DNA of 64,000 nucleotides from Octopus sinensis. Its lineage: Eukaryota. Location of the stretch: positions 22,196,001 to 22,260,000 of the forward strand of contig NC_043021.1 of the NCBI RefSeq assembly GCF_006345805.1. Reading direction: 5' to 3'. Both the position numbers and the translations under genes were made by a program. This document shows, piece by piece, positions 2,939 through 60,937 of this stretch (position 1 is its first letter; every line of letters starts with the position of its first letter). The notes under the pieces were generated by a model. That model was not told the DNA's origin, did no database searches, and saw only the letters and a list, made by a program, of their open reading frames with translations.

Positions 2939-4876
2939 TTGGTTCATCTGGGACACCTGACAGGAAGAGATCCAGTTTTATTTTAAAGACATCTGCATCC
3001 TCCCCATTCAGGTCTCTCATGTCCTTTTGAAGAGCTGTGGACCTCTGAAGCCCAGGCTATCACAGTATCGTGTCCTACATCTTGATGGTAAATTTGGAGT
3101 TCTTGGCACTATGCAGTGACGCCCAGTTCTAGTATTTGTGTAACTCTCGATGCCAAAGTTTGGGACAAGTCCTTCTAGGATCTTCCAGATGTATATTATG
3201 GCATATCTTTCTCGCCTACGCTCTAAGGAATAGGGTCTTAATCTCTTGAGTCTTTCCCAGTAGCTTATATGCTGCACAGAGGCTATCTCCTTCGTGTAGC
3301 TTCGTTGGATCGCCTCAAGTTCTGTGATTAACTTGACACTGGATGGTGACCATAGCTGAGGGCAATAGTCAAAGTGACTTAGGACAAGTGTCCTCCAGAG
3401 GACCATCATGGTTTCCTGGTCTCTTGTTCTAATGGTTCTAAGAATCCATCCGGTCAGTCGCCTACATTTCATTGCCAATTTAGCAACATGCACATGAAAG
3501 GTTGCATCATTACTCATGTAAATACCCAGGTCTCACACTGATTGTGCCTCTGGGATTGCAATCCCTCCAGGTCCAGTGTATTTATTGGATATTGTATTTA
3601 GTGTTGCATGCTGATAGCATAAAGCTTGAAACTTTTCAGCATTGAACTGCATGCTATTCGTTTCAGCCCACTTGTATATTTTGTCCAGCTCACATTGCAG
3701 GTGCTTAGTGTCTTCAGGGTTCTGTATTGCCTGTGAAACTTTTGTATCATCTGCATAACTTGTGATCGTGGCTCTGCGTGGCTGAGGGCATGTCTGAGAG
3801 GGCCATTATGAACAGTAGTGGTCCCAAAACAGTGCCCTGCGAAACACCGCTCACTATTTGCGTGTTAATAGAAGTGGCAACTATCACCTGGTAGTCAGAA
3901 AGTCTTGAAGCCATTCTCCAACAAATTTTCCAACTATGCCAAAATCACGCAGTTTGTGACATATCATTCCATGATCGACTTTATCAAAGGCCTTTGCAAA
4001 GTCAGATATATGACTTCTAAATTTGAGTGGTTGAGCAGTCATTTCAGCACCCAGTGTTGTAGGAGCTGGGTTAGGCAGCTTCTTCCTGGTCGGAAACCAT
4101 GTTGGGTGTCAGGCAGCAAGTCATTTTCTTCAAGGAAGGTGATTAGTTTCCTTCTGACTATTCGTTCCATGACCTTGCTGATGTGTAAGGTCAGAGAGGT
4201 AGGTCTGTAGTTCTTGGCCTCCGCTCTGCTAGCTCTTTTATGAATAGGGCATATTTTACCTTCCTTCAGTTTTCTTGGAAGTTTGCCAGTTGCAAGGAAG
4301 CTCTGAAAGAGGAACTGCAGTGGTCTTGCTAGGACTCTCTTACATACATTTAGAAGGATTGCTGGGAATCCATCGGGGCCAGTAGCTGAGTTTGTTTTCA
4401 TTTCATCTATAGCCTTTATTACATCACCTTCCTTTATATTGATGTAATCAATCATCGCTGCCTCTGATTTTATATCTGCAGTGGTAAAGACATCAGTTGG
4501 AATGCTGACTTGAAAATGCCCTAGGAGTGGAGTGAAAATACTCTTGAATTGCTCATTTAGTATTTCACTTACCCTCATTGGATTTCCTGTGAGTGTGCCA
4601 TCCTTTTCAAGGAGTGGCCTTATCCTACAGTGCAACGTAGCAGTTTCTTTGGCATACCTGTAGAAAGCTCTGGGGTTAGATTTTATGTTGTCTATAGCCC
4701 AGGCTTCTTTGTCAGCTCTTTCTATTTCATGGGAGAGTTGCAGACATTTTTCAATTTCCAACAGTTTTATTTTCAGGCGGGACTTTTCACTGTTTTCAAT
4801 TTGTTTGTTTAGGCGATTTGAAAGTTTTGTACGCCGTCTCATTAGAATTTTCCTCTCTCTGGGGATTTTGTTCTTG
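2933..4876 (-). mobile_element. 5'-truncated CR1/L2-group LINE, ORF2 reverse transcriptase, frameshifted
   Basis: Translations include [57 protein letters not shown] (~3750), YCPQLWSP, YSLERRRER and KLDLFLSGVPDEP. Confidence 0.9.
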
Positions 4877-5306
4877 TATATATATATATATATGTATATA
4901 TATATGTATGTGTATATATATATATGTATATATATACATATGTGTATATATATATATATATATATATGTATATGTATATATATATGTATGTATATATATA
5001 AGTATATATATATGTATATATATATATATATATACATATATATGTATATATATATATACATATATATACGTATGTATGTATATGTTTATATGTATGTATC
5101 ATTTGTGTCCCGAAGTACGTGTTTGTGAATGCTGTGAGCGCCGAAAACGAAACAAACCCAGAAACAGAAACAGCAACAACAAGAAAAAAAAATAATAATA
5201 ATAGTAAATGAAACAAAGATGGAAAGACTTGCTGAAATGTGGGGAGGTACGGATGAAGTTTATATGCATATATCTATCTATATACATATATATATGCATG
5301 TGTATA

Positions 5307-8686: not shown

Positions 8687-10295
8687 TCACACACGTATAT
8701 ACATATATGAACACACGCGTATATACATATATGAACACACGCGTATATACATATATGAACACACGCGTATATACATATATGTACACACGCGTATATACAT
8801 ATATGAACACACGCGTATATACATATATGAACACACGCGTATATACATATATGAACACACGCGTATATACATATATGTACACACGAGTATATACATATAT
8901 GAACACACGCGTATATACATATATGAACACACGCGTATATACATATATGAACACACGCGTATATACATATATGAACACACGCGTATATACATATATGAAC
9001 ACACGCGTATATACTTATATGAACACACGCGTATATACATATATGTACACACGCGTATATACATATATGAACACACGCGTATATACATATATGAACACAC
9101 GCGTATATACATATATGAACACACGCGTATATACATATATGAACACACGCGTATATACATATATGTACACACGCGTATATACATATATGAACACACGCGT
9201 ATATACATATATGAACACACGCGTATATACATATATGTACACACGCGTATATACATATATGAACATACGCGTATATACATATATGAACACACGCGTATAT
9301 TCATATATGAACACACGCGTATATACATATATGTACACACACGTATATACATATATGAACACACGCGTATATACATATATGAACACACGCGTATATTCAT
9401 ATATGAACACACGCGTATATTCATATATAAACACACGCGTATATACATATATGTACACACGCGTATATACATATATGAACACACGCGTATATACATATAT
9501 GTACACACGCGTATATTCATATATGTACACACGCGTATATACATATATGAACACGCGTATATACATATATGAACACACGCGTGTATACATATATGTACAC
9601 ACGCGTATATACATATATGAACACACGCGTATATACATATATGAACACACGCGTATATACATATATGAACACACGCGTATATACATATATGAACACACGC
9701 GTATATACTTATATGAACACACGCGTATATACATATATGTACACACGCGTATATACTTATATGAACACACGCGTATATACATATATGTACACACGCGTAT
9801 ATACATATATGAACACACGCGTATATACATATATGAACACACGCGTATATTCATATATGAACACACGCGTATATACATATATGAACACACGCGTATATAC
9901 ATATATGAACACACGCGTATATAATATATGAACACACGAGTATATACATATAGAACACACGCGTATATACATATATGAACACACGCGTATATTCATATAT
10001 GAACACCACGCGTATATACATATATGAACACACGTGTATATTCATATATGAACACACGCGTATATACATATATAACACACGCGTATATACATATGAACAC
10101 ACGCGTATATACTATATGAACACACGCGTATATACATATATGAACACACGCGTATATACTTATATGAACACACGCGTATATACATATATGAACACACGCG
10201 TATATTCATATATGAACACACGCGTATATACATATATGAACACACGCGTATATACTTATATGAACACACGCGTATATACATATATGAACACACGC
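8687..10295. repeat. 24-bp minisatellite ACACACGCGTATATACATATATGA, about 65 copies
   Basis: Read directly. It explains the MNTRVYTY and EHTRIYIY repeat ORFs. Confidence 0.95.
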
Positions 10296-13079: not shown

Positions 13080-15146
13080 GACAGACGTGTTTTTTTGCTC
13101 CGGCAAATGTCACGTGTTAACGTGAAATATTGAACATTTTACGGCAACAGGTAGGACATTTTGGATATTTTTGGAAGCATAGTGAGGTTTATTGCTTGCC
13201 GTTAATACTTTTTTGGCATTAATATTAATTAGTGTTAACACTTTTCTGCGAGTAATAAGCTTCACTTTGCTTCGGATGTATTTGTTCTGCCTGTTGGCGC
13301 ATTTATTGTCTCACCTTTTAGTGAGAATTGTGTATTTTAAGGAGGCATAGCCCCTCCTCAAAAATTAACTTGTTCGCTTGGATTTACCACGGAGAACCAA
13401 GTGTGCTGCAACTGGAGTACCCTGTTTCGTGAGGATTACCAGTTGCAGAACTGTGTTGCCATTATTTGAACTGTCTTCCTTCGTCCTTTTCTCTGCTCTG
13501 TTTTCTGTTCTGTCATTGTGTTTTTTTCTTATTGGACTTTGAACTTTTAGTTGAACTTTTTTTCAAAATCATGGCAGCAAAAGAAACCACTGCTTTGGAA
13601 TGGGAGGTTGTCCCACCTAAGCAGTGGATTGAAAGTCTTGAGAAGAGGACGGTGGTCCTACGAACCTGTTCTAGGTCGCGTGGAGCTATCGCCCTCTTCG
13701 ACAGGAGCACCATAGAGAGAGAGTTGGGGGACCGCCTACCAACGATAAAGTTTATTTCTCGGGGGACTAAATTTGCAACGGTGTGGTTGCTGTTTGGTAT
13801 CCCCGAGGAAGCTAGCAGATTTGCTAGCGAGCCACTGGAGGGAGAGGAAATTTTGTTCCTCTCCTCGTATTGTGGCAGAAAAGTAAAAAGAGCCTGGGTT
13901 TGTGGGCTGCCCCCGGGCACGGACGCGGAATGGATCGAGAAGACCATCCGGCGAGGCCTGGGGGATAGCGGATCCAGGCTACTGAGTGTGAAAATGGCTC
14001 CCGCGGTCGCCTGGGAGGGGTCAAAGGCAACTTTGACCCTGTGGACACCGGTGGCCGTGGGAGAAATGAAATTCCCGGACTTCCTGAGAATGGCTGGGCA
14101 CAGGTATCCGGTGATACTCGAGGGACGCCCCCCCAAGTGTCACCTGTGCCTGAAGCCCGGACATATCAAGAGGAATTGTCCCGGGGCCGTGGTGGTGCCC
14201 CGGAGCATGAAGGGGAAAAGGCGCCCGCCGCCCCCTCATTGGAGGGGGAGACGGCGGAAGTCGTGGAGGAGTTGCCTCCACGAAAAGAAAGAGACAGGCG
14301 AGCAACAATGGTTGCTCGCCAAAGAACGCTCAGGTGGCGGAGGGGGATAGCGATCCCCCGTGTCTGGTGACGGAGTCCCCTGGGTCAGCAGTCTCCCCAA
14401 AAGAAGGAGGAGAAAAAGAAAGAGAGGTCGGGCGGCTGATATCCATGAGCCGCAGACATTGGCGGGAACTGTGCCGCCAACGAAAGAACGTATTGGTCCT
14501 CTTCTAGAGGAGGAGAATTGAAAAAAAAATGATGGAAGAGTACCACAAGGGAGCACCTTTAGCCTTCACACAGGACCCCGAATGGCCTCCGCAGATAGCT
14601 GCGGAGGCCGTGGCGTTCGACGTGACGCTTGAGCTAAAGGAGCTCAATGAAGATTATAACTTGGTCCCGGGCGACGCGAACTCGGAACTTGACTACGTCT
14701 GAGGGAGGCGTGGTGATGGTGGAGGGCGCGGCACAAGCTATTTCGAGGACGATATGTAATTATTGAACTGTTATTATTAGTAATGGACTTAAGTCCAAAA
14801 ATTGAAAAATTGTAAGAGGATTAATACCTCGTTTTATATTAATAATGGACTGCTAAGCCCAAAAATTGGAAAAATTGTAAGAGGTTTAATACCTCGTTTT
14901 GCATTTTTATTAATAATGGACTGCTAAGTTCAAAAATTGGAAAAATTGTAAGAGGTTTAATACCTCGTTTTGTGTTTATCTTTAAAAAGAACAATGTTTT
15001 AGAGAAGCGAAAGTCGGCGGGCGCTTTTTGTCTTCTCCCATCCTTATCATCTGTCTTTCATTATCATTCACTTCATTAATGTCCTCGTCCAGCCCGCAAA
15101 GCTAACTTAATCTGTGTACTGCCTTTATGGCAAATGTTTTGAAATA
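13080..15146 (+). mobile_element. ORF1-only L1/Tx1-like non-LTR element (HAL1-like architecture)
   Basis: Flanked by an imperfect ~16-17 bp TSD (AAGTAGCTT-CTTACCA 13064-13079; AAGTAGCTTGCTAACTA 15147-15163). It has a ~490-bp 5' UTR, a CCHC ORF, a 3' UTR with 3 tandem ~60-bp repeats and AATAAA at 15143-15148. No EN/RT seen. Confidence 0.7.
13571..14350 (+). CDS. L1/Tx1-type ORF1-like protein (RRM-like region plus CCHC zinc knuckle); C-terminus frameshifted, probably extending to ~14702
   Basis: ATG at 13571. Contains VKRAWVCGLPPG and CHLCLKPGHIKRNC (C-X2-C-X4-H-X4-C, 14138-14179). A downstream fragment MMEEYHKG...ELDYV* lies at 14529-14702. Confidence 0.75.
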   Translation: MAAKETTALEWEVVPPKQWIESLEKRTVVLRTCSRSRGAIALFDRSTIERELGDRLPTIKFISRGTKFATVWLLFGIPEEASRFASEPLEGEEILFLSSYCGRKVKRAWVCGLPPGTDAEWIEKTIRRGLGDSGSRLLSVKMAPAVAWEGSKATLTLWTPVAVGEMKFPDFLRMAGHRYPVILEGRPPKCHLCLKPGHIKRNCPGAVVVPRSMKGKRRPPPPHWRGRRRKSWRSCLHEKKETGEQQWLLAKERSGGGGG

Positions 15147-16127: not shown

Positions 16128-16192
<65 letters not shown>

Positions 16193-16195
16193 GTA

Positions 16196-16241
<46 letters not shown>

Positions 16242-16460
16242 TGCGAATATAAACAAGAAGGGTAGTAATATTATTTACTACCAGGTGCCCAGCACAAAAG
16301 ACGATTAGTCATAAGACAAAAATATTATTCATATAGAAAAATATTATTCATGTAGTTATACAATTAAGGGCTCCTAAATAAAGATGCCGAGTGCTGGGAA
16401 CACAAAAAGGGGATGAATTTATCGAGAGTGAAAATCAAAAACGTTTACCGATAACTTTAA

Positions 16461-16538
16461 CAACTCGTACCGCGGTTTCTGCTTCTTTCTAGCAAAACAC
16501 AGAATATGTTTGCTAAGGCCAGCTTCATCAGCGAGTTG
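16461..16538 (-). ncRNA. Type-I hammerhead ribozyme (array copy L1)
   Basis: CAACTCG-CTGATGA-AGCT...AGCA-GAAA-CCGCGG-TA-CGAGTTG. Confidence 0.85.
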
Positions 16539-16902
16539 CCTGAATTTAATCGAGGTCTGCAGCGATGTGGGGCTATACGTTAAACCCGACTACTAGCAGA
16601 TCTTAACTTTTCAAATCTCTGCGCAGACGCAAAATTTACGCGGGCATGCCGGGAAGAATTTTACGAATAAATTCATCATGTAGTATGCGAATATAACAAG
16701 AAGGGTAGTAATATTATTTACTACCAGGTGCCCAGCACAAAAGACGAATTAGTCATAAGACAAAAATATATTCATATAGAAAAATATTATTCATGTAGTT
16801 ATACAATTAAGGGCTCCTAAATAAAGATGCGAGTGCTGGGAACACAAAAAGGGGATGAATTTATCGAGAGTGAAAATCAAAAACGTTTACCGATAACTTT
16901 AA

Positions 16903-16980
16903 CAACTCGTACCGCGGTTTCTGCTTCTTTCTAGCAAAACACAGAATATGTTTGCTAAGGCCAGCTTCATCAGCGAGTTG
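16903..16980 (-). ncRNA. Type-I hammerhead ribozyme (array copy L2)
   Basis: Identical motif to L1. Confidence 0.85.
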
Positions 16981-17346
16981 CCTGAATTTAATCGAGGTCT
17001 GCAGCGATGTGGGGCTATACGTTAAACCCGACTACTAGCAGATCTTAACTTTTCAAATCTCTGCGCAGACGCAAAATTTACGCGGGCATGCCGGAAGAAT
17101 TTTACGAATAAATTCATCATGTAGTATGCGAATATAAACAAGAAGGGTAGTAATATTATTTACTACCAGGTGCCCAGCACAAAAGACGAATTAGTCATAA
17201 GACAAAAATATTATTCATATAGAAAAATATTATTCATGTAGTTATACAATTAAGGGCTCCTAAATAAAGATGCCGAGTGCTGGGAACACAAAAAGGGGAT
17301 GAATTTATCGAGAGTGAAAATCAAAAACGTTTACCGATAACTTTAA

Positions 17347-17424
17347 CAACTCGTACCGCGGTTTCTGCTTCTTTCTAGCAAAACACAGAATATGTTTGCT
17401 AAGGCCAGCTTCATCAGCGAGTTG
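17347..17424 (-). ncRNA. Type-I hammerhead ribozyme (array copy L3)
   Basis: Identical motif to L1. Confidence 0.85.
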
Positions 17425-17790
17425 CCTGAATTTAATCGAGGTCTGCAGCGATGTGGGGCTATACGTTAAACCCGACTACTAGCAGATCTTAACTTTTCAA
17501 ATCTCTGCGCAGACGCAAAATTTACGCGGGCATGCCGGGAAGAATTTTACGAATAAATTCATCATGTAGTATGCGAATATAAACAAGAAGGGTAGTAATA
17601 TTATTTACTACCAGGTGCCCAGCACAAAAGACGAATTAGTCATAAGACAAAAATATATTCATATAGAAAAATATTATTCATGTAGTTATACAATTAAGGG
17701 CTCCTAAATAAAGATGCCGAGTGCTGGGAACACAAAAAGGGGATGAATTTATCGAGAGTGAAAATCAAAAACGTTTACCGATAACTTTAA

Positions 17791-17868
17791 CAACTCGTAC
17801 CGCGGTTTCTGCTTCTTTCTAGCAAAACACAGAATATGTTTGCTAAGGCCAGCTTCATCAGCGAGTTG
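17791..17868 (-). ncRNA. Type-I hammerhead ribozyme (array copy L4)
   Basis: Identical motif to L1. Confidence 0.85.
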
Positions 17869-18552
17869 CCTGAATTTAATCGAGGTCTGCAGCGATGTGG
17901 GGCTATACGTTAAACCCGACTACTAGCAGATCTTAACTTTTCAAATCTCTGCGCAGACGCAAAATTTACGCGGGCATGCCGGGAAGAATTTTACGAATAA
18001 ATTCATCATGTAGTATGCGAATATAAACAAGAAGGGTAGTAATATTATTTACTACCAGGTGCCCAGCACAAAAGACGAATTAGTCATAAGACAAAAATAT
18101 TATTCATATAGAAAAATATTATTCATGTAGTTATACAATTAAGGGCTCCTTTGCTAGAAAGAAGCAGAAACCGCGGTACGAGTTGTTAAAGTTATCGGTA
18201 AACGTTTTTGATTTTCACTCTCGATAAATTCATCCCCTTTTTGTGTTCCCAGCACTCGGCATCTTTATTTAGGAGCCCTTAATTGTATAACTACATGAAT
18301 AATATTTTTCTATATGAATAATATTTTTGTCTTATGACTAATTCGTCTTTTGTGCTGGGCACCTGGTAGTAAATAATATTACTACCCTTCTTGTTTATAT
18401 TCGCATACGACATGATGAATTTATTCGTAAAATTCTTCCCGGCATGCCCGCGTAAATTTTGCGTCTGCGCAGAGATTTGAAAAGTTAAGATCTGCTAGTA
18501 GTCGGGTTTAACGTATAGCCCCACATCGCTGCAGACCTCGATTAAATTCAGG

Positions 18553-18630
18553 CAACTCGCTGATGAAGCTGGCCTTAGCAAACATATTCTGTGTTTTGCT
18601 AGAAAGAAGCAGAAACCGCGGTACGAGTTG
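18553..18630 (+). ncRNA. Type-I hammerhead ribozyme (array copy R2)
   Basis: Stem I CAACTCG 18553-59 / CGAGTTG 18624-30; CTGATGA 18560-66; stem II extension TAGCAAA 18576-82 / TTTGCTA 18595-601; GAAA 18612-15; palindrome ACCGCGGT; GTA cleavage triplet with the cut after 18623. Confidence 0.85.
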
Positions 18631-18995
18631 TTAAAGTTATCGGTAAACGTTTTTGATTTTCACTCTCGATAAATTCATCCCCTTTTGTGTTCCCAGCACT
18701 CGGCATCTTTATTTACGAGCCCTTAATTGTATAACTACATGAATAATATTTTTCTATATGAATAATATTTTTGTCTTATGACTAATTCGTCTTTTGTGCT
18801 GGGCACCTGGTAGTAAATAATATTACTACCCTTCTTGTTATATTCGCATACTACATGATGAATTTATTCGTAAAATTCTTCCCGGCATGCCCGTGTAAAT
18901 TTTGCGTCTGCGCAGAGATTTGAAAAGTTAAGATCTGCTAGTAGTCGGGTTTAACGTATAGCCCCACATCGCTGCAGACCTCGATTAAATTCAGG

Positions 18996-19073
18996 CAACT
19001 CGCTGATGAAGCTGGCCTTAGCAAACATATTCTGTGTTTTGCTAGAAAGAAGCAGAAACCGCGGTACGAGTTG
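18996..19073 (+). ncRNA. Type-I hammerhead ribozyme (array copy R3)
   Basis: Identical motif; predicted cut after 19066. Confidence 0.85.
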
Positions 19074-19436
19074 TTAAAGTTATCGGTAAACGTTTTTGAT
19101 TTTCACTCTCGATAAATTCATCCCCTTTTGTGTTCCCAGCACTCGGCATCTTTATTTAGGAGCCTTAATTGTATAACTACATGAATAATATTTTTCTATA
19201 TGAATAATATTTTTGTCTTATGACTAATTCGTCTTTTGTGCTGGGCACCTGGTAGTAAATAATATTACTACCTTCTTGTTTATATCGCATACTACATGAT
19301 GAATTTATTCGTAAAATTCTTCCCGGCATGCCCGCGTAAATTTTGCGTCTGCGCAGAGATTTGAAAAGTTAAGATCTGCTAGTAGTCGGGTTTAACGTAT
19401 AGCCCCACATCGCTGCAGACCTCGATTAAATTCAGG

Positions 19437-19514
19437 CAACTCGCTGATGAAGCTGGCCTTAGCAAACATATTCTGTGTTTTGCTAGAAAGAAGCAGAAAC
19501 CGCGGTACGAGTTG
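19437..19514 (+). ncRNA. Type-I hammerhead ribozyme (array copy R4)
   Basis: Identical motif; predicted cut after 19507. Confidence 0.85.
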
Positions 19515-19642
19515 TTAAAGTTATCGGTAAACGTTTTTGATTTTCACTCTCGATAAATTCATCCCTTTTTGTGTTCCCAGCACTCGGCATCTTTATTTAG
19601 GAGCCCTTAATTGTATAACTATATATAAATATGTATATATAT

Positions 19643-19673
<31 letters not shown>

Positions 19674-19684
19674 GTGTGTGTGTA

Positions 19685-19722
<38 letters not shown>

Positions 19723-19724
<2 letters not shown>

Positions 19725-20301
19725 CGAGAAAGAAGCAACAAGAATGGATAGGTTTTTAGTACAATCGTTTCATACAAGGACAGGCTTTATTAAAAGTTGC
19801 AAAGATTGCAGCATATAAACGTGTCCCGTACTCATCAGCTAAAATACATGTGAGTTCTCTAGACATACTAGTGGTTGAGGCTATACTCATGAAGTAATGT
19901 AGATAATTAAGTAACATAAACAGATTTCCAAAGTTCATTAAAGTTTTTTAAAGATGATGTACAGTCTTATCACAGAATTTAAAAAAAGTTTTAGTAGCAT
20001 CACAGAGAAGGTGACTTAATCCATAGTGTGCATATGAATTTCCAGAGATATGAGGAGGGATTACATACTCACAGATGACAAATTTATCCATTGCTAATCA
20101 CAACGAGGTGGGTCTTAATTATCTACATTACTTCATGAGTATAGCCTCAACCACTAGTATGTCTAGAGAACTCACATGTATTTTAGCTGATGAGTACGGG
20201 ACACGTTATATGCTGCAATCTTTGCAACTTTTAATAAAGCCTGTCCTTGTATGAAACGATTGTACTAAAAACCTATCCATTCTTGTTGCTTCTTTCTCGC
20301 T
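19723..20301. repeat. Fold-back with ~188-bp near-identical inverted arms
   Basis: 19723-19911 is the reverse complement of 20114-20301, with a ~200-bp spacer. The left side abuts (TA)n. Confidence 0.95.
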
Positions 20302-20416
20302 TATAATCACCCCACATTACTGTATTGTTAAAACCGTATAGTTTTTTTTTGGTGCATCTAAGTTAGGTACCATATTCAAGTAAATTCATTTAAATTAACT
20401 TGAATCTTTATTGCTT

Positions 20417-33988: not shown

Positions 33989-34690
33989 AGTATATATATA
34001 TGTATATCTATGTATATGTATGTATATATATATATATGTATATGTATATGTATATAAATGTGTATATGTATATATATATATATATGTATATGTATATGTA
34101 TATATGTGTGTATATGTATATACTTATGTAGGCATATGTATATATATATATATATATATATGTATATGTATATATGTATGTAGGTATATGTATATATATA
34201 TATATGTATGTATATATATATATATGTAGATATATGTATATATATATATGTATGTATATGTATATATGTATATATTTATATATATGTATGTATATGTATA
34301 TATGTATATTTATATATATGTATGTATATGTATATATGTATATATATATGTATGTATATGTATATATATATGTATGTATAAGTGTATATATATATATATA
34401 TGTATCTGTATATATGTACATATTTATATATATGTATGTATATGTATATATTTATATATATGTATGTATTTGTATATATGTATATATATATGTATGTTTG
34501 TATATATATATATATATACTAATTAATTAAGGGTTCAGCAACGACTTGCCTCACCACACACCGAATTTAGAAATAGCAGTCAAAAAGTTTTGGCTATTGA
34601 TACCATGAGTTGCGGTGATGTCTTCTAGTGCCTTCAAATTTAATACACAATTATTAATAATTGAGACGCAATTATTTATGATTGAAGAGT

Positions 34691-34782
34691 CCTACGCTGA
34701 GGAGGAGAATAGTCAGGTAAGACATAATTATTTAATTTTTATGCCCTGCAATTGATTTAATTCCGAAACGTACGTCCGTAGG
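34691..34782 (+). ncRNA. Type-I hammerhead ribozyme
   Basis: CCTACG-CTGAGGA-GG...CC-GAAA-CGTACG-TC-CGTAGG, with a long stem II (CATAA/TTATG); predicted cut after C34776. Confidence 0.85.
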
Positions 34783-35287
34783 TGACTTAATATAGAATGA
34801 TTTCCGTCATTTCTTTCTCTTTTGTCTGCGTCGTTTGCTTTTTAAGTGCTTTGGTGTTCCTGGGATCTCCCTTTTAAGTAGAAGGAATAGCCAAAACTTT
34901 TTGACTGCTATTTCTAAATTCGGTGTGTGGTGAGGCAAATCGTTGCTAAACCCTTAATTAATTAGTATTACTTAAACCTTCCTTGAATGGGTCTTTTACA
35001 TGCCGAACTCTACTTGATGAAATTAATGATTATTTCTGAATTAATTAATTTCACCCTATATTATTGATAATTGTATTTCATCCCAGTAAAACAACCGTAG
35101 CATCTTATTTTTGGCAGCACGCTTGCGGAAGGGGGATGGTGACATACTCTCTTTCACCCTTTGAATCCGTTGGTACTGGTAAGGCTTACCTTACCAGTAC
35201 CATGAGTTGAGGTGATGTCTTCTAGTGCCTTCAAATTTAATACACAATTATTAATAATTGAGACGCAATTATTTATGATTGAAGAGT

Positions 35288-35378
35288 CCTACTCTGAGGA
35301 GGAAAATAGTCAGGTAAGACATAATTATTTAATTTTTATGCTCTACAATGACTTGATTCCGAAACGTACGTCCGTAGG
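35288..35378 (+). ncRNA. Type-I hammerhead ribozyme, second copy
   Basis: CCTACT-CTGAGGA-GG...AGTCA/TGACT...CC-GAAA-CGTACG-TC-CGTAGG. One stem I mismatch; predicted cut after C35372. Confidence 0.75.
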
Positions 35379-35403
35379 TAACTTAATATAGAAGGATTCC
35401 CTA

Positions 35404-35487
<84 letters not shown>

Positions 35488-35781
35488 TTATATATATATA
35501 TTTCAACAATTGAGGGTAAATTAATTAATTAATCAATTTCACCAAGTATTCAGTATGCAAGGGACCATTTAAGGCGAATTCAAATTATTACATTATATAA
35601 AAGGGCTTAGTAAAATAAATTACTTTGCCGCATACTGAACTCATTAGAAATAGCAGCTAAAAAAACTTTTTTAAAACTATTTCTAATACTTAAAGAAAAC
35701 CTCTCTCATATCGTGTTTGCTCAATTCAACTCACGAAAATATGGGGGTAGAGACATTAAAAAATCAAATGCAAAGGTTATT

Positions 35782-35834
35782 TGAGAACGTACGTTTCAAG
35801 ATTAGTCAAACTCGACATTTCTATCATCAGCTCA
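35782..35834 (-). ncRNA. Type-I hammerhead ribozyme motif, partly decayed
   Basis: Minus strand reads TGAG-CTGATGA-TAGAAATGTC-GAGTTT-GACTAATCTT-GAAA-CGTACG-TT-CTCA. Confidence 0.6.
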
Positions 35835-37377
35835 GAACTCCCTGGTTTGGATTTGAAAACACTGAATGTGGGAGCATACCCTTTCGGCTTCTTATCGCTT
35901 CTGAAGATCTGCTCGTAACTAATATATATATATATATATGCGTTTATGAATTTGTGTTGCAAAATTCCTGATGTGAAATCGTGTGTTGAAGCAGATGTTG
36001 TTGTATTTCGGGATGGTCTTTTCTTTTTCGCCAATTAAACACACGTATATATTCGTTTTTCACTCGTTTATTACTGTTCTTATTTGAACTTATGGCCATT
36101 GTCAGGAAATCTTTCGTGACCTCTTTCCGATCTTGTGTATGCTCTTGCTCGTTGTGAATGCTTTTGTATTTGTTCCCCGTCACCTCTTGACAACGCGAAT
36201 TGGTTTGTTTATGTCCCCTTTTATCTGGAAGTTTGGCCAGAGAGACCGATGAAATGTGTACCAGACTCCAAATAAGAAAGATAACTTTGTTCGACAAAAT
36301 TATGTCGAGGTGGTGCCAGGCTATGGCCGTAGTCCAAAGATTCGAACAAATAAGAACTTTGTTTTCCAACCACAACGTTCCGCGTTCAATCCTTAATGTT
36401 TTCTACTATAGTTTCGGGTTGATCAAAGTGGATTTAATAGACGGAAACTGGAAAGAATCTCATCGTATAATACCTGTGTGTATGTGTGTATATATGTGTG
36501 TGTGTGTGTGTCTTTGTGTCTATGTTTCTCTCTCATTACAGTTCGGTAACCCATGGTAACGAAACACTTTCACAAGAGACCGTAAGTAGGTTAGAGGCTT
36601 CAACGAAAGAAATAAGTAGTACGGTTGATCCGTTTGACAAAAAACTTCCTGCAAAGGAGATGCTGTAGCACGGCCGCAGTCTATCGACTGAAAAGTCGTG
36701 AGGGTTGAGAAAGATGTAAGATTAGGTGCAGAAGCTATGGCCGTTGGTTGGTTCCAACCCGTTTAGAATTCGTGGACATCAGGGTAGAGTTTGGAGACGA
36801 AAGAGAGTTCAGAACGATAATATAAACTGAATAATGTAAGGTCGTATCATTAAGAAAGAAGGAACACTGTACAGAAGCTAATGGATGGACTTAAGATACG
36901 AAATGGCGAATGTTGATAGATAGATAGGTAAATAGATAGAGAGAGAGACAGACATACAGACAGACAGATAGATAAGTAGATAGAGATATAGATAGGTAGA
37001 CAGATAGATAGATAGTTAAGTAGGTAGGTAGATAAATAGGTAGGTAGGCAAATAAGCTGGTAGACAGGGAGGTAAATAGATAGGTAGTTAGATAAATAGG
37101 TAGGTAGGTAGAGAGAGAGAGAGTGTGTGTGTGTGTAAGACAAAGAGCGGGAGAGAGACATATAGATAGGTAGGTAAGTAGAAACAGATATGATCTAAAT
37201 ACAGACAGATACAAATATATGTGTGGTTGTGTGTGTGGTTGTATCTGTACATACACACAAGGAATATGTCGAAAGAGTGATTTGCATACGTAGATCTACT
37301 AAGATAGCTCTAGAAAGAATGAGACGAACGTCATATGTATGCATGAGGGATTTGCGTGTGTATGTTTGAGCGCGTGT

Positions 37378-37477
37378 NNNNNNNNNNNNNNNNNNNNNNN
37401 NNNNNNNNNNNNNNNNNNNNNNNNNNNNNNNNNNNNNNNNNNNNNNNNNNNNNNNNNNNNNNNNNNNNNNNNNNNNN
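37378..37477. other. Assembly gap (100 N)
   Basis: Read directly from the sequence. Confidence 1.
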
Positions 37478-60601: not shown

Positions 60602-60937
60602 TTTAGGGGTTAGGGTTAGGGTTAGGGTTAGGGTTAGGATTAGGGTTAGGGTTAGGCGTTAGGGTTTGGGTTAGGGGTTAGGGTTAGGCTTATGCTTAGG
60701 GTTAGGGTTAGGGTCTAGGGTTAGGGGTTAGGGTTAGCTTTAGGGTTAGGCGTTAGGGTTTGGGTTAGGGGTTAGGCTTAGGCTTATGCTTAGGGTTAGG
60801 GTTAGGGTCTAGGGTTAGGAGTTAGGGTTAGCATTAGGGTTAGGGATTAGGGTTTGGGTTAGGGGTTAGGGTTAGGGTTAGGAGTTAGGGTTAGGGTTAG
60901 GGTAAGGGTTATGGTTAGGGGTTAGGGTTAGGGTTAG
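60602..60937 (+). repeat. Interstitial telomeric (TTAGGG)n array with variant repeats
   Basis: About 335 bp of TTAGGG with TTAGGGG, TTAGGC, TTTGGG and TCTAGGG variants; contains an internal ~80-bp duplication. Confidence 0.95.

What the first reader, a model, noticed from the sequence alone, without database searches (positions are those of the whole stretch)
16241..19620. Apparent satellite is a tandem array of hammerhead ribozymes (retrozyme/circRNA-like element)
Seen: every 441-445 bp unit has CAACTCG-CTGATGA-[long stem II]-GAAA-CCGCGG-TA-CGAGTTG, meaning a perfect 7-bp stem I, a canonical core and a GUA cleavage site. There are 7 complete copies and 1 partial. The unit has no ORF and is rich in inverted repeats: GTGCCCAGCAC/GTGCTGGGAAC (16285-95/16391-401), GATGAATTTAT/ATAAATTCATC (16412-22/16667-77) and GGTAGTAA/TTACTACC. 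Established: metazoan non-LTR retrozymes are tandem non-coding HHR repeats whose transcripts self-cleave into monomers that circularise, and minimal HHRs with a palindromic stem III act as dimers. Inference: a transcript would give ~444-nt monomers (cuts after 18178, 18623, 19066, 19507). These could form a structured circRNA that is re-inserted as multimers by rolling-circle reverse transcription. The unit is at or above the upper size range I recall for metazoan retrozymes, and I know of no description of this family.
Basis: partly seen in the sequence, partly recalled or inferred. Interest (0 to 1): 0.92.

Follow-up and report, generated by a model that had tools for sequence, protein, structure and literature searches.

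The report
Hammerhead-ribozyme retrozyme array in octopus DNA
This 3.4-kb repeat is a non-coding mobile element of an already known class (a "retrozyme"): each ~445-bp unit carries a hammerhead self-cleaving RNA motif, and the insertion footprint points to the copying machinery long suspected of moving such elements, but cleavage and circular RNA are untested.

Summary
The repeat is real. It has 7 complete hammerhead (HHR) motifs and one 29-nt fragment, in units of 441-445 bp that are 98.9-100% identical.

It is not one head-to-tail array. Two arms meet head-to-head at 18150. Four HHRs lie on the minus strand and three on the plus strand.

The whole structure sits in a (TA)n microsatellite and is bounded by a 14-bp direct duplication, TATATATAAATATG. 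It was therefore founded by an insertion. Inverted 5'-truncated arms plus a (TA)n target match the published insertion pattern of Penelope-like elements (PLEs).

The HHR is type I. All core bases are present, helix I is a perfect 7 bp, the cleavage triplet is GUA, and helix III is an 8-nt palindrome. Two copies are predicted to fold into a double hammerhead.

Two features are atypical: an A.A pair at the base of helix II and a 45-nt helix II. Rfam's Hammerhead_1 model does not detect it.

Three other HHR-bearing elements lie in the same window, all next to (TA)n.

Best reading: a new, young cephalopod family of metazoan non-LTR retrozymes. Self-cleavage, circular RNA and dispersed copies could not be tested. 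One protein match points to an octopod genome.

The parts
16128..16229 (.). Left flanking (TA)n microsatellite (target sequence)
   Evidence: TRF row 16128-16242, period 2; sequence
16230..16243 (+). Left copy of the 14-bp target-site duplication TATATATAAATATG. Its last 4 nt, TATG, are also readable as unit sequence (microhomology).
   Evidence: Only 4 exact copies in the 64-kb window, two of them exactly at the array boundaries and on the same strand
16240..18150 (-). Minus-strand arm. Read 5'->3' on the minus strand it is unit positions 93-444, then three full units (17797-17354, 17353-16910, 16909-16468), then unit positions 1-229. It is 5'-truncated at the centre, with its 3' end outward.
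   Evidence: blastn of the unit against the window; TRF; inverted-repeat table
17791..17868 (-). Complete type I hammerhead motif (helix I strands included); cleavage between 17798 and 17797 on the minus strand
   Evidence: Pattern match; descriptor
17347..17424 (-). Complete hammerhead motif; cleavage between 17354 and 17353
16903..16980 (-). Complete hammerhead motif; cleavage between 16910 and 16909
16461..16538 (-). Complete hammerhead motif; cleavage between 16468 and 16467
18150..18150 (.). Head-to-head junction of the two arms. One T is shared: minus arm starts at unit position 93, plus arm at unit position 416.
18150..19621 (+). Plus-strand arm: unit positions 416-444 (29 nt), then three full units (18179-18623, 18624-19066, 19067-19507), then unit positions 1 to about 113. 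It is 5'-truncated at the centre, with its 3' end outward.
18150..18185 (+). Hammerhead fragment: 3' part of helix II, GAAA, helix III, GUA and the helix I 3' strand only. It has no CUGAUGA box and is not a functional cleavage site.
   Evidence: Sequence; absent from the pattern matches
18553..18630 (+). Complete hammerhead motif; cleavage after 18623
18996..19073 (+). Complete hammerhead motif; cleavage after 19066
19437..19514 (+). Complete hammerhead motif; cleavage after 19507
19620..19633 (+). Right copy of the 14-bp target-site duplication TATATATAAATATG. Its first 2 nt, TA, are also readable as unit sequence.
19634..19723 (.). Right flanking (TA)n microsatellite. Joining the two flanks with one duplication copy restores an uninterrupted TA-rich microsatellite.
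   Evidence: TRF row 19620-19723; empty-site join

Best explanation
The locus is one insertion of a non-autonomous, non-coding retroelement of the metazoan non-LTR retrozyme class, in what looks like an octopod genome. The family has a 445-nt unit and appears to be undescribed.

Shown by the sequence:
- About 7.6 near-identical units form two head-to-head arms. Both are 5'-truncated at the centre, with 3' ends outward.
- The arms sit inside a (TA)n microsatellite and are bounded by a 14-bp target-site duplication.
- Each unit carries a type I hammerhead. All core nucleotides are present (CUGAUGA, GAAA, A15.1-U16.1, A17).
- Helix I is 7 bp. In the monomer it closes the ~355-nt body.
- Helix II is long and imperfect, and an A.A pair separates it from the core.
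- Helix III, ACCGCGGU, is a palindrome. Alone it can make only 2 bp plus a tetraloop. Between two ribozymes it makes 8 bp.

Inferred mechanism:
1. Each arm is transcribed outward as a multimer.
2. Neighbouring hammerheads pair through helix III into double hammerheads and cut after GUA. [quoted passage not shown]
3. A host RtcB-type tRNA ligase circularises the monomers. In the circle the lone hammerhead has a weak helix III, so it rarely re-cuts.
4. A reverse transcriptase supplied in trans copies the circle round and round. The leading candidate is a Penelope-like element (RT plus GIY-YIG endonuclease).
5. Reverse transcription is primed from both 3' ends of a staggered cut in (TA)n. The two multimeric cDNAs meet in the middle, giving the inverted two-arm structure.

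Not decidable from this locus: whether all 7.6 units arrived in one event, or whether a smaller founder insertion later expanded by unequal crossing-over.
For: Motif:
- 7 identical copies against 0 in shuffles.
- Strict descriptor: 0 hits in 30 Mb of random sequence.

Dimer logic:
- Cofolding two HHR segments gives the double hammerhead as the minimum free energy structure: -60.5 kcal/mol against 2 x -23.3 for monomers. The trans helix III alone is worth -14.1.
- The HHR-constrained monomer fold lies within 2 kcal/mol of the free minimum.

Insertion footprint:
- The 14-mer TATATATAAATATG sits exactly at both boundaries, with only 4 copies in the window.
- Joining the flanks restores a TA microsatellite.
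- The arms are inverted, 5'-truncated at non-equivalent unit positions (93 and 416), with a 1-nt overlap.

Published PLE insertion features (10.1101/2021.04.23.441226; PMC8557442):
- partial tandems;
- an inverted 5'-truncated copy at the 5' end;
- a (TA)n bias, reported there for the Naiad clade.

Published retrozyme features (PMC7229834):
- 150-450 bp tandem units;
- type I HHR;
- GC below 50%;
- target-site duplication longer than 4 bp;
- dimeric action where helix III is weak;
- PLEs proposed as the mobiliser.

Other support:
- PLE-type HHRs carry an extra nucleotide after A9, a large helix II and a palindromic helix III (PMC4209133).
- Axolotl HHR_Amex2 has a U.U mismatch at the base of helix II and still cleaves, better as a dimer (PMC7229834).
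- The same architecture recurs in three unrelated neighbouring elements, with different but complementary helix I sequences and self-complementary helix III inserts. Two of them get full-length sub-threshold Rfam Hammerhead_1 hits. The chance expectation is 0.02-0.08 such motifs per window.
- Units differ by 3 substitutions in about 2,660 nt, so the insertion is young or homogenised.
- Octopus vulgaris has 30 recently active Penelope families (PMC13282606).
Against: - Rfam Hammerhead_1 gives no hit to this family, at gathering score, at E<=10 over 3.9 kb, or in a 121-nt search. Neighbouring families score 18-21 bits.
- The A.A pair between the core and G10.1-C11.1 is a departure from the consensus whose effect on catalysis is unknown.
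- No loop 1/loop 2 tertiary contact can be recognised.
- The units are so alike that there is no covariation within the family.
- There is no second locus of this family in the window. None was found in JGI metagenome or IMG/VR contigs, though neither holds cephalopod genomes.
- There are no expression data.
- No PLE ORF lies among the window's ORFs of 120 aa or more. The only RT match among the five I scanned is a non-PLE LINE-like fragment.
- The 30-40 bp 'tail' described for PLE insertions is not seen at either boundary.
- A plus-strand read-through transcript would carry antisense units followed by sense units. It would fold back as double-stranded RNA, which competes with ribozyme folding.
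- The monomer fold is only moderately better than shuffles (z = -2.3).
Confidence: 0.7

Rival explanations
1. Local satellite with a fossil hammerhead. A single short HHR-bearing fragment, for example a solo PLE terminal repeat, landed here. The array then grew in place by unequal crossing-over or replication slippage, and one part was inverted by a later rearrangement. The ribozyme no longer works and no circular RNA is made.
For: - Li, Clavereau and Pollet propose local amplification of PLE-derived terminal sequences as the origin of retrozyme arrays (10.64898/2026.07.22.740005).
- There is no other copy of the unit in the window.
- Rfam does not recognise the motif.
- A target-site duplication would also flank an array that expanded after insertion.
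Against: - All 7 hammerhead copies are intact and identical, with every core base present.
- There are only 3 substitutions in about 2,660 nt, so there has been no time for a 'fossil' to decay.
- The same head-to-head, 3'-ends-outward topology recurs in element B and in the inverted fragment of element C. That points to the integration mechanism rather than to separate later inversions.
- The double-hammerhead fold is strongly favoured.
Confidence: 0.15
2. The array is part of an autonomous Penelope-like element rather than an independent retrozyme. It would be a severely 5'-truncated PLE insertion consisting only of its hammerhead-bearing terminal repeat region, in the usual tandem and inverted arrangement.
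For: - PLE insertions are highly 5'-truncated, form partial tandems and carry inverted 5'-truncated copies. Their terminal repeats hold HHRs with a palindromic helix III and a large helix II (PMC4209133; PMC8557442).
- In Xenopus, retrozyme families are sister to PLE terminal repeats (10.64898/2026.07.22.740005).
Against: - There are 7.6 units, not the 1-2 terminal repeats of a PLE.
- The repeat period runs exactly from hammerhead to hammerhead.
- No RT or endonuclease remnant adjoins the array. ORFs within it are 50 aa or shorter and have no homologues.
- No PLE ORF lies among the window's ORFs of 120 aa or more.
Confidence: 0.1
3. The inverted two-arm structure is an assembly artefact (a fold-back or chimeric long read). 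The true locus would be a single head-to-tail array.
For: - Differences between units are mostly homopolymer indels, which is typical of noisy long reads.
- The window has a 100-N scaffold gap at 37378-37477.
- Published work notes that complex PLE structures cause assembly problems (PMC8557442).
Against: - The arms are not a perfect palindrome. They begin at different unit positions (93 and 416), have different lengths (4.3 and 3.3 units) and carry different private variants.
- The structure lies inside a contig, with distinct unique flanks and a matching 14-bp duplication.
- Two other elements nearby show the same topology.
Confidence: 0.05
4. The locus acts mainly as a hairpin-RNA source. 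Read-through transcription across both arms gives a ~1.4-kb double-stranded stem that is diced into small RNAs, which silence the family. The hammerheads are incidental. This could hold alongside the main explanation.
For: The arms are 98-100% complementary over stretches of up to 416 nt. This follows from established knowledge of inverted-repeat small-RNA loci in animals and was not tested here.
Against: - No small-RNA data are available.
- The topology is explained by the insertion mechanism and need not have been selected.
- The locus is very young.
Confidence: 0.1

Closest known systems
Metazoan non-LTR retrozymes (Cervera and de la Pena 2020, PMC7229834), e.g. the 350-390 bp repeats of the mussel Mytilus galloprovincialis
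   Same: - Non-coding tandem units of a few hundred bp with one type I hammerhead per unit.
- GC below 50% and no LTR.
- Target-site duplication longer than 4 bp.
- In the predicted monomer fold the hammerhead is left free.
- The host is a mollusc.
   Different: - The unit sequence is unrelated, as far as can be told without their sequences.
- Helix II is 45 nt with internal loops, not about 4 bp plus a loop.
- An A.A pair sits between the core and G10.1-C11.1.
- No loop 1/loop 2 contacts can be recognised.
- The array is two head-to-head arms in a (TA)n target, an arrangement those papers do not mention.
- Expression and cleavage are untested here.
Newt satellite 2 and axolotl retrozymes Rtz_331/Rtz_353 with HHR_Amex1/Amex2 (PMC7229834)
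   Same: - Helix III is too weak to act alone and has a palindromic loop, so the ribozyme works as a dimer between tandem units.
- Amex2 has a U.U mismatch at the base of helix II, parallel to the A.A here and to the U.U in neighbouring element D.
   Different: - Units are 330-350 bp, in vertebrate hosts.
- Helix II is short and canonical, with conserved loop-loop contacts.
- There are tens of thousands of copies, documented as linear and circular RNAs.
Hammerheads in the terminal repeats of Penelope-like elements (Cervera and de la Pena 2014, PMC4209133) and the PLE insertion architecture (Craig et al. 2021, PMC8557442)
   Same: - An extra nucleotide between A9 and G10.1.
- G10.1-C11.1 is retained.
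- Helix II is larger than usual.
- Helix III is palindromic.
- Insertions form partial tandems with an adjacent inverted 5'-truncated copy.
- Insertions favour (TA)n microsatellites.
   Different: - There is no RT/GIY-YIG ORF.
- There are more than two units.
- Helix I is 7 bp, not 2-5 bp.
- A second extra A lies on the 3' side of helix II.
- No 30-40 bp tail is present.
- The (TA)n bias was described for Naiad PLEs, which lack hammerheads and are only remnants in cephalopods.
Twin-priming inversions of LINE-1 insertions (from my own knowledge: Ostertag and Kazazian 2001)
   Same: Both 3' ends of a staggered target cut prime reverse transcription. The insertion has sense 5' ends meeting in the middle with microhomology, 3' ends outward, and a target-site duplication around the whole.
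   Different: - A LINE enzyme, a linear polyadenylated template, and no tandem multimers.
- Here there is no poly(A), and each arm holds several units.

Membership tests
Metazoan non-LTR retrozyme | Non-coding tandem repeat with a unit of a few hundred bp (150-450 bp in PMC7229834; 51-972 bp in 10.64898/2026.07.22.740005) | tested here: met
   Units are 441-445 bp, about 7.6 in total. No ORF exceeds 50 aa, and none has a match in the protein collection.
Metazoan non-LTR retrozyme | One type I hammerhead per unit with the conserved catalytic core | tested here: met
   CUGAUGA, GAAA, A15.1-U16.1 and A17 are present in all 7 units, and helix I is open-ended (type I). This holds at the motif level only.
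Metazoan non-LTR retrozyme | Low GC (below 50%), no LTR | tested here: met
   GC is 37.8%. There are no terminal direct repeats other than the units themselves. Primer-binding site and polypurine tract were not searched for.
Metazoan non-LTR retrozyme | Target-site duplication longer than 4 bp, when one is present | tested here: met
   14-bp TATATATAAATATG at both boundaries. The length is uncertain by 2-4 nt because of microhomology with the unit.
Metazoan non-LTR retrozyme | Monomer predicted to be highly self-paired | tested here: inconclusive
   62% of bases are paired in the circular fold. z = -2.2 against mononucleotide shuffles (circular fold) and -2.3 against dinucleotide shuffles (linear fold); the antisense strand gives -3.6. 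This is a moderate result, not a striking one.
Metazoan non-LTR retrozyme | Transcribed and self-cleaved, and present as unit-length linear and circular RNA | not testable with these tools
   No transcriptome access. The exact-protein look-up used to reach public assemblies found nothing.
Metazoan non-LTR retrozyme | Many copies dispersed in the genome | not testable with these tools
   No other copy in the 64-kb window. Scans of JGI metagenome and IMG/VR contigs were negative, but neither collection holds cephalopod genomes.
Metazoan non-LTR retrozyme | Co-occurrence with Penelope-like elements in the host genome | not tested
   From the literature only. O. vulgaris has 30 recently active Penelope families (PMC13282606), and cephalopods carry Naiad remnants (PMC8557442). 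The host is identified only by one 65%-identical Octopus sinensis protein.
Hammerhead ribozyme type I (Rfam RF00163) | Covariance-model score at or above the gathering threshold (34 bits) | tested here: not met
   No hit at gathering score, at E<=10 over 3.9 kb, or in a 121-nt search. Neighbouring families B and C reach 18-21 bits over the full model.
Hammerhead ribozyme type I (Rfam RF00163) | Three helices around the core, with NUH at the cleavage site | tested here: met
   Helix I is 7 bp (9 with G.U pairs). Helix II folds on its own at -11.9 kcal/mol. Helix III is 2 bp plus a tetraloop alone, or 8 bp in trans. The cleavage triplet is GUA.
Hammerhead ribozyme type I (Rfam RF00163) | G10.1-C11.1 directly next to A9 and G12 | tested here: not met
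   An A on each side (an A.A pair) separates G-C from the core: CUGAUGA-A-GCU...AGC-A-GAAA.
Hammerhead ribozyme type I (Rfam RF00163) | Loop 1/loop 2 tertiary contacts | tested here: inconclusive
   No canonical loops. Helix II has an internal loop after 3 bp (GGCC / GAAAG in the fold) that might substitute. No tool is available to test this.
PLE-type (pLTR) hammerhead / PLE insertion | [quoted passage not shown] | tested here: met
   An extra A follows A9, helix II is 45 nt, and the helix III insert CCGCGG is a perfect palindrome.
PLE-type (pLTR) hammerhead / PLE insertion | Partial tandem plus an adjacent inverted 5'-truncated copy, with insertion into a microsatellite (PMC8557442) | tested here: met
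   Two head-to-head 5'-truncated arms inside (TA)n.
PLE-type (pLTR) hammerhead / PLE insertion | An RT plus GIY-YIG endonuclease ORF between the repeats | tested here: not met
   There is no ORF of any size with homologues inside the array. The only RT match in the window is a LINE-like fragment at 4039-4872.
PLE-type (pLTR) hammerhead / PLE insertion | A 30-40 bp 'tail' extension at one end of the insertion | tested here: not met
   Unit sequence abuts the duplication directly at both ends.

The most novel reading that the evidence does not exclude
The locus preserves the footprint of how retrozyme circles are put back into DNA. Reverse transcription would be primed from both strands of a staggered cut in a (TA)n microsatellite and run round a circular RNA template on each side. 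That would give two multimeric arms that meet head-to-head inside a 14-bp duplication.

This would be direct structural evidence that a Penelope-like (GIY-YIG) machinery mobilises animal retrozymes. The link has so far been argued from co-occurrence and terminal-repeat phylogeny. It would also favour rolling-circle reverse transcription over purely local satellite expansion as the origin of the arrays.

A companion point is that four unrelated hammerhead families in 64 kb share a long helix II and a 6-nt self-complementary helix III insert. Two of them also have an N.N pair at the base of helix II. This may define a cephalopod-typical hammerhead architecture that curated models miss.
Probability: 0.35. 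Interest if true: 0.55.

Novelty: new member of a known kind. Interest (0 to 1): 0.38.

Why it matters
Retrozymes are a recently recognised route to abundant circular RNAs in animals. Their mobilising enzyme and the way their arrays form are still argued from indirect evidence.

This locus adds a young cephalopod family. More usefully, it is a clean insertion site: a duplication, a (TA)n target, and two inverted 5'-truncated multimer arms. This matches the published insertion signature of Penelope-like elements. If the pattern holds genome-wide, it gives a simple sequence test of who moves retrozymes and whether multimers arrive in one event.

It also shows that Rfam's Hammerhead_1 model misses or under-scores all four octopod hammerhead variants found in this window. 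Ribozyme counts in such genomes may therefore be too low.

For general biology it is an ordinary member of a known class.

Tried and rejected
1. Rfam at gathering score and at E<=10 over the region. There was no hammerhead hit for this family. The only matches were spurious microRNA or snoRNA hits in TA repeats or weak ones on the unit. I rejected this as evidence against the motif, because neighbouring families with the same architecture but no A.A pair do score.

2. Reaching public assemblies through the unit's small ORFs. The exact look-up of 5 unit ORFs and 5 other window ORFs found none in the collection. A homology search with a 67-aa frame found no candidates. This is a weak negative, because such short ORFs are rarely called.

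3. Exact-pattern scans of JGI metagenome contigs and IMG/VR. Both gave 0 hits, as expected, since neither holds cephalopod genomes.

4. A second protein search to confirm the host. It returned only unnamed ENA/Logan LINE-like fragments, so the host call rests on one Octopus sinensis hit.

5. Covariation within the family. This is impossible, because the units are 98.9-100% identical.

6. Coding potential. Rejected: ORFs are 50 aa or shorter, differ between units through homopolymer indels, and have no homologues.

7. A ribozyme on the antisense strand, which would suggest viroid-like symmetric replication. Neither the descriptor nor Rfam found one.

8. A fold-back assembly artefact. Judged unlikely, because the arms start at different unit positions and differ in length.

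I replaced it with simpler controls.

Full report
**1. What is there**

The sequence at 16240-19620 is a long-period repeat. Tandem Repeats Finder reports it as two arrays: 16240-18150 (period 444, 4.3 copies, 99% matches) and 18150-19621 (period 441, 3.3 copies, 98%).

The inverted-repeat search shows the two halves are reverse complements of each other, for example 416 nt at 100%. blastn of one unit against the window places every piece. I number the unit from the base after the proposed cleavage site.

- The minus-strand arm, read 5'->3' from 18150 down to 16240, is unit 93-444, three full units, then unit 1-229.
- The plus-strand arm is unit 416-444 (29 nt), three full units (18179-18623, 18624-19066, 19067-19507), then unit 1 to about 113.

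So both arms are 5'-truncated at the centre, at different unit positions. They share a single T at 18150, and their 3' ends point outward.

**2. The units**

Six full units cut at the GUA site are 441-445 nt long and differ at 11 of 445 alignment columns. Eight of these differences are single-base indels in homopolymer runs. Three are singleton substitutions. The length variation is therefore probably sequencing noise, and the true unit is about 445 nt.

GC is 37.8%. No ORF exceeds 50 aa. The ORFs change from unit to unit with the indels, and none is in the protein collection.

**3. The hammerhead**

The motif is CAACUCG-CUGAUGA-[45 nt]-GAAA-CCGCGG-UA-CGAGUUG. It occurs seven times, four on the minus strand and three on the plus strand. 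All copies are identical, against 0 in 100 shuffles.

It is a type I arrangement:
- Helix I is open-ended, a perfect 7 bp (9 with two G.U pairs).
- The CUGAUGA and GAAA boxes, A15.1-U16.1 and A17 are all present, and the cleavage triplet is GUA.
- Helix II folds alone at -11.9 kcal/mol. It is a 3-bp base (GCU/AGC), then an internal loop, then a longer distal stem with one bulge.
- Helix III is the palindrome ACCGCGGU. Within one molecule it can make only A-U and C-G around a CGCG loop. Between two ribozymes it makes 8 bp (-14.1 kcal/mol).

Cofolding two 100-nt hammerhead segments gives the textbook double hammerhead as the minimum free energy structure: -60.5 kcal/mol against 2 x -23.3. For a single copy the hammerhead-consistent fold is within 2 kcal/mol of the free minimum.

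A strict descriptor found no hit in 30 Mb of composition-matched random sequence. It required at least 6 Watson-Crick bp in helix I, both boxes, 3 bp at the base of helix II, a paired helix III and UH.

**4. What is atypical**

An A lies on each side between the core and G10.1-C11.1: CUGAUGA-A-GCU...AGC-A-GAAA. An extra nucleotide after A9 is a conserved trait of Penelope-type hammerheads (PMC4209133). The second A, on the 3' side, makes this an A.A pair at the base of helix II.

The closest precedent is axolotl HHR_Amex2. It has a U.U mismatch there and cleaves poorly alone but well as a dimer (PMC7229834).

Helix II is far longer than the usual 4 bp, and no loop-loop contact can be recognised.

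Rfam's Hammerhead_1 model finds nothing: at gathering score, at E<=10 over 3.9 kb, or in a 121-nt search.

**5. The insertion footprint**

The array lies inside a (TA)n microsatellite (16128-16242 and 19620-19723). The 14-mer TATATATAAATATG sits exactly at both boundaries, at 16230-16243 and 19620-19633, on the same strand. Only four exact copies exist in the whole window on both strands.

Joining the flanks with one copy restores an uninterrupted TA-rich microsatellite. Two to four bases at each boundary can be read as either unit or duplication, that is, microhomology.

This is a target-site duplication, so the locus was founded by an insertion rather than arising in place.

The combination matches what Craig et al. 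describe for Penelope-like element insertions: tandem copies, an adjacent inverted 5'-truncated copy, and a (TA)n target (10.1101/2021.04.23.441226; PMC8557442). The topology also matches twin priming of LINE-1, a comparison I draw from my own knowledge.

The retrozyme papers I read do not mention inverted arrays or microsatellite targets.

**6. Context**

A relaxed descriptor found three further hammerhead-bearing, non-coding elements in the same window, each next to (TA)n.

| Element | Coordinates | Structure | Hammerhead |
|---|---|---|---|
| B | 19724-20302 | ~190-nt arms, 100% complementary, head-to-head like the main array | One motif on each strand |
| C | 34519-35401 | 597-bp partial tandem, with an 83-nt inverted fragment at its 5' end | GUC site, CGUACG helix III |
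| D | 35500-35920 | Single copy | Minus strand; U.U pair at the base of helix II |

- The four families have unrelated sequences.
- In A, B and C the two strands of helix I differ between families yet are fully complementary within each. In D, helix I is only partly paired (4 bp, then a mismatch).
- All have a 6-nt helix III insert that is self-complementary as RNA, and all have a long helix II of 26-61 nt.
- Rfam gives full-length but sub-threshold Hammerhead_1 hits to C (21.4 and 18 bits) and B (18.5 bits). The gathering score is 34 bits.
- The relaxed descriptor is expected 0.08 times per window by chance, or 0.02 times with a self-complementary helix III.

This recurrence is the best comparative support available for the hammerhead reading of family A.

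**7. Host**

A 264-aa zinc-knuckle ORF at 13556-14347 has one strong match, an uncharacterised Octopus sinensis protein (65% identity, E = 6.6e-86). A second search gave only unnamed fragments. The window is extremely rich in TA microsatellites and has an interstitial (GGGTTA)n. I take the host to be an octopod, species undetermined.

In Octopus vulgaris, 30 Penelope families have recently active insertions (PMC13282606). I found no paper on hammerheads or retrozymes in cephalopods.

**8. Mechanism**

Shown:
- the array structure;
- the motif;
- the duplication and target;
- the near-identity of the units;
- the thermodynamic preference for the double hammerhead.

Inferred from the published retrozyme model (PMC7229834):
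1. Each arm is transcribed outward as a multimer.
2. Adjacent hammerheads pair through helix III and cleave after GUA.
3. The minus strand would release three monomers (17797-17354, 17353-16910, 16909-16468). The plus strand would release two (18624-19066, 19067-19507).
4. An RtcB-type ligase circularises them.
5. The lone hammerhead in a circle has a weak helix III and rarely re-cuts.
6. A reverse transcriptase supplied in trans copies the circle into multimeric cDNA.

The two-arm structure suggests priming from both 3' ends of a staggered cut.

Whether all 7.6 units arrived together or a smaller founder expanded later cannot be told from this locus. Li et al. favour local amplification (10.64898/2026.07.22.740005). 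Cervera and de la Pena favour rolling-circle reverse transcription (PMC7229834).

The enzyme is not identified. PLEs are the leading candidate. Microsatellite-targeting LINEs are an alternative, and that point rests on my own knowledge.

**9. Verdict**

The retrozyme interpretation is supported at the level that sequence can reach. The unit size is within, not above, the published range. The element is a new member of a known kind.

Its modest added value is the clean insertion footprint that ties a retrozyme array to a PLE-type integration pattern, and the evidence that the curated Rfam model under-detects octopod hammerheads. Interest is 0.38.

Noticed in passing
window 19724-20302: Element B, directly right of the array and separated from it only by (TA)n. 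It is an inverted pair (arms 19723-19911 and 20114-20301, 100% complementary, 202-nt spacer). Each arm carries a type I hammerhead motif, UUUUAG-CUGAUGA-[59-60 nt]-GAAA-CGAUUG-UA-CUAAAA, head-to-head with 3' ends outward. Rfam Hammerhead_1 scores 18.5 bits, E = 0.037, below the gathering score.
   Followed up: partly
window 34519-35401: Element C, lying between two TA microsatellites. It is a 597-bp partial tandem (34601-34805 matches 35198-35401). Hammerhead motifs start at 34691 (CCUACG-CUGAGGA-[61 nt]-GAAA-CGUACG-UC-CGUAGG) and at 35288, where helix I is degenerate. An 83-nt inverted fragment at the left end (34516-34598) is the reverse complement of 34886-34968. Rfam Hammerhead_1 scores 21.4 and 18 bits.
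   Followed up: partly
window 35500-35920: Element D, lying between TA microsatellites. It has a single minus-strand hammerhead-like motif (CTGATGA 5' end at 35830) with a U.U pair at the base of a 26-nt helix II, a CGUACG helix III, a GUU site, and a helix I that is only partly paired. It looks like an older or decayed copy of another family.
   Followed up: partly
window 60607-60937: Interstitial telomere-like repeat, (GGGTTA)n, about 53 copies at 84% matches. The 2014 PLE-hammerhead paper notes that eukaryotic hammerhead repeats often lie near telomeric sequences. No hammerhead was found next to this one.
   Followed up: no
window 3017-5061 (minus strand) and 13466-14350 (plus strand): Retroelement remnants. 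There is an RT fragment (Pfam RVT_1, E = 1.7e-5) whose reading frame runs into a microsatellite, and a downstream 166-aa ORF with many unnamed homologues. A separate 294-aa zinc-knuckle ORF is 65% identical to Octopus sinensis LOC115225585. These look LINE-like, not PLE-like.
   Followed up: partly
window 37378-37477: A run of 100 N, which is a scaffold gap. The hammerhead array lies well inside the contig to its left.
   Followed up: no
window 8688-10295: A 24-bp minisatellite, CACACGCGTATATACATATATGAA, about 67 copies at 95% matches. More generally the window has an extreme density of (TA)n and related microsatellites: Tandem Repeats Finder reported 156 rows (overlapping rows describe the same array).
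   Followed up: no
window 16240-19620: All eight length differences between units are single-base indels in homopolymer runs. This suggests an incompletely polished long-read assembly rather than real unit heterogeneity.
   Followed up: yes
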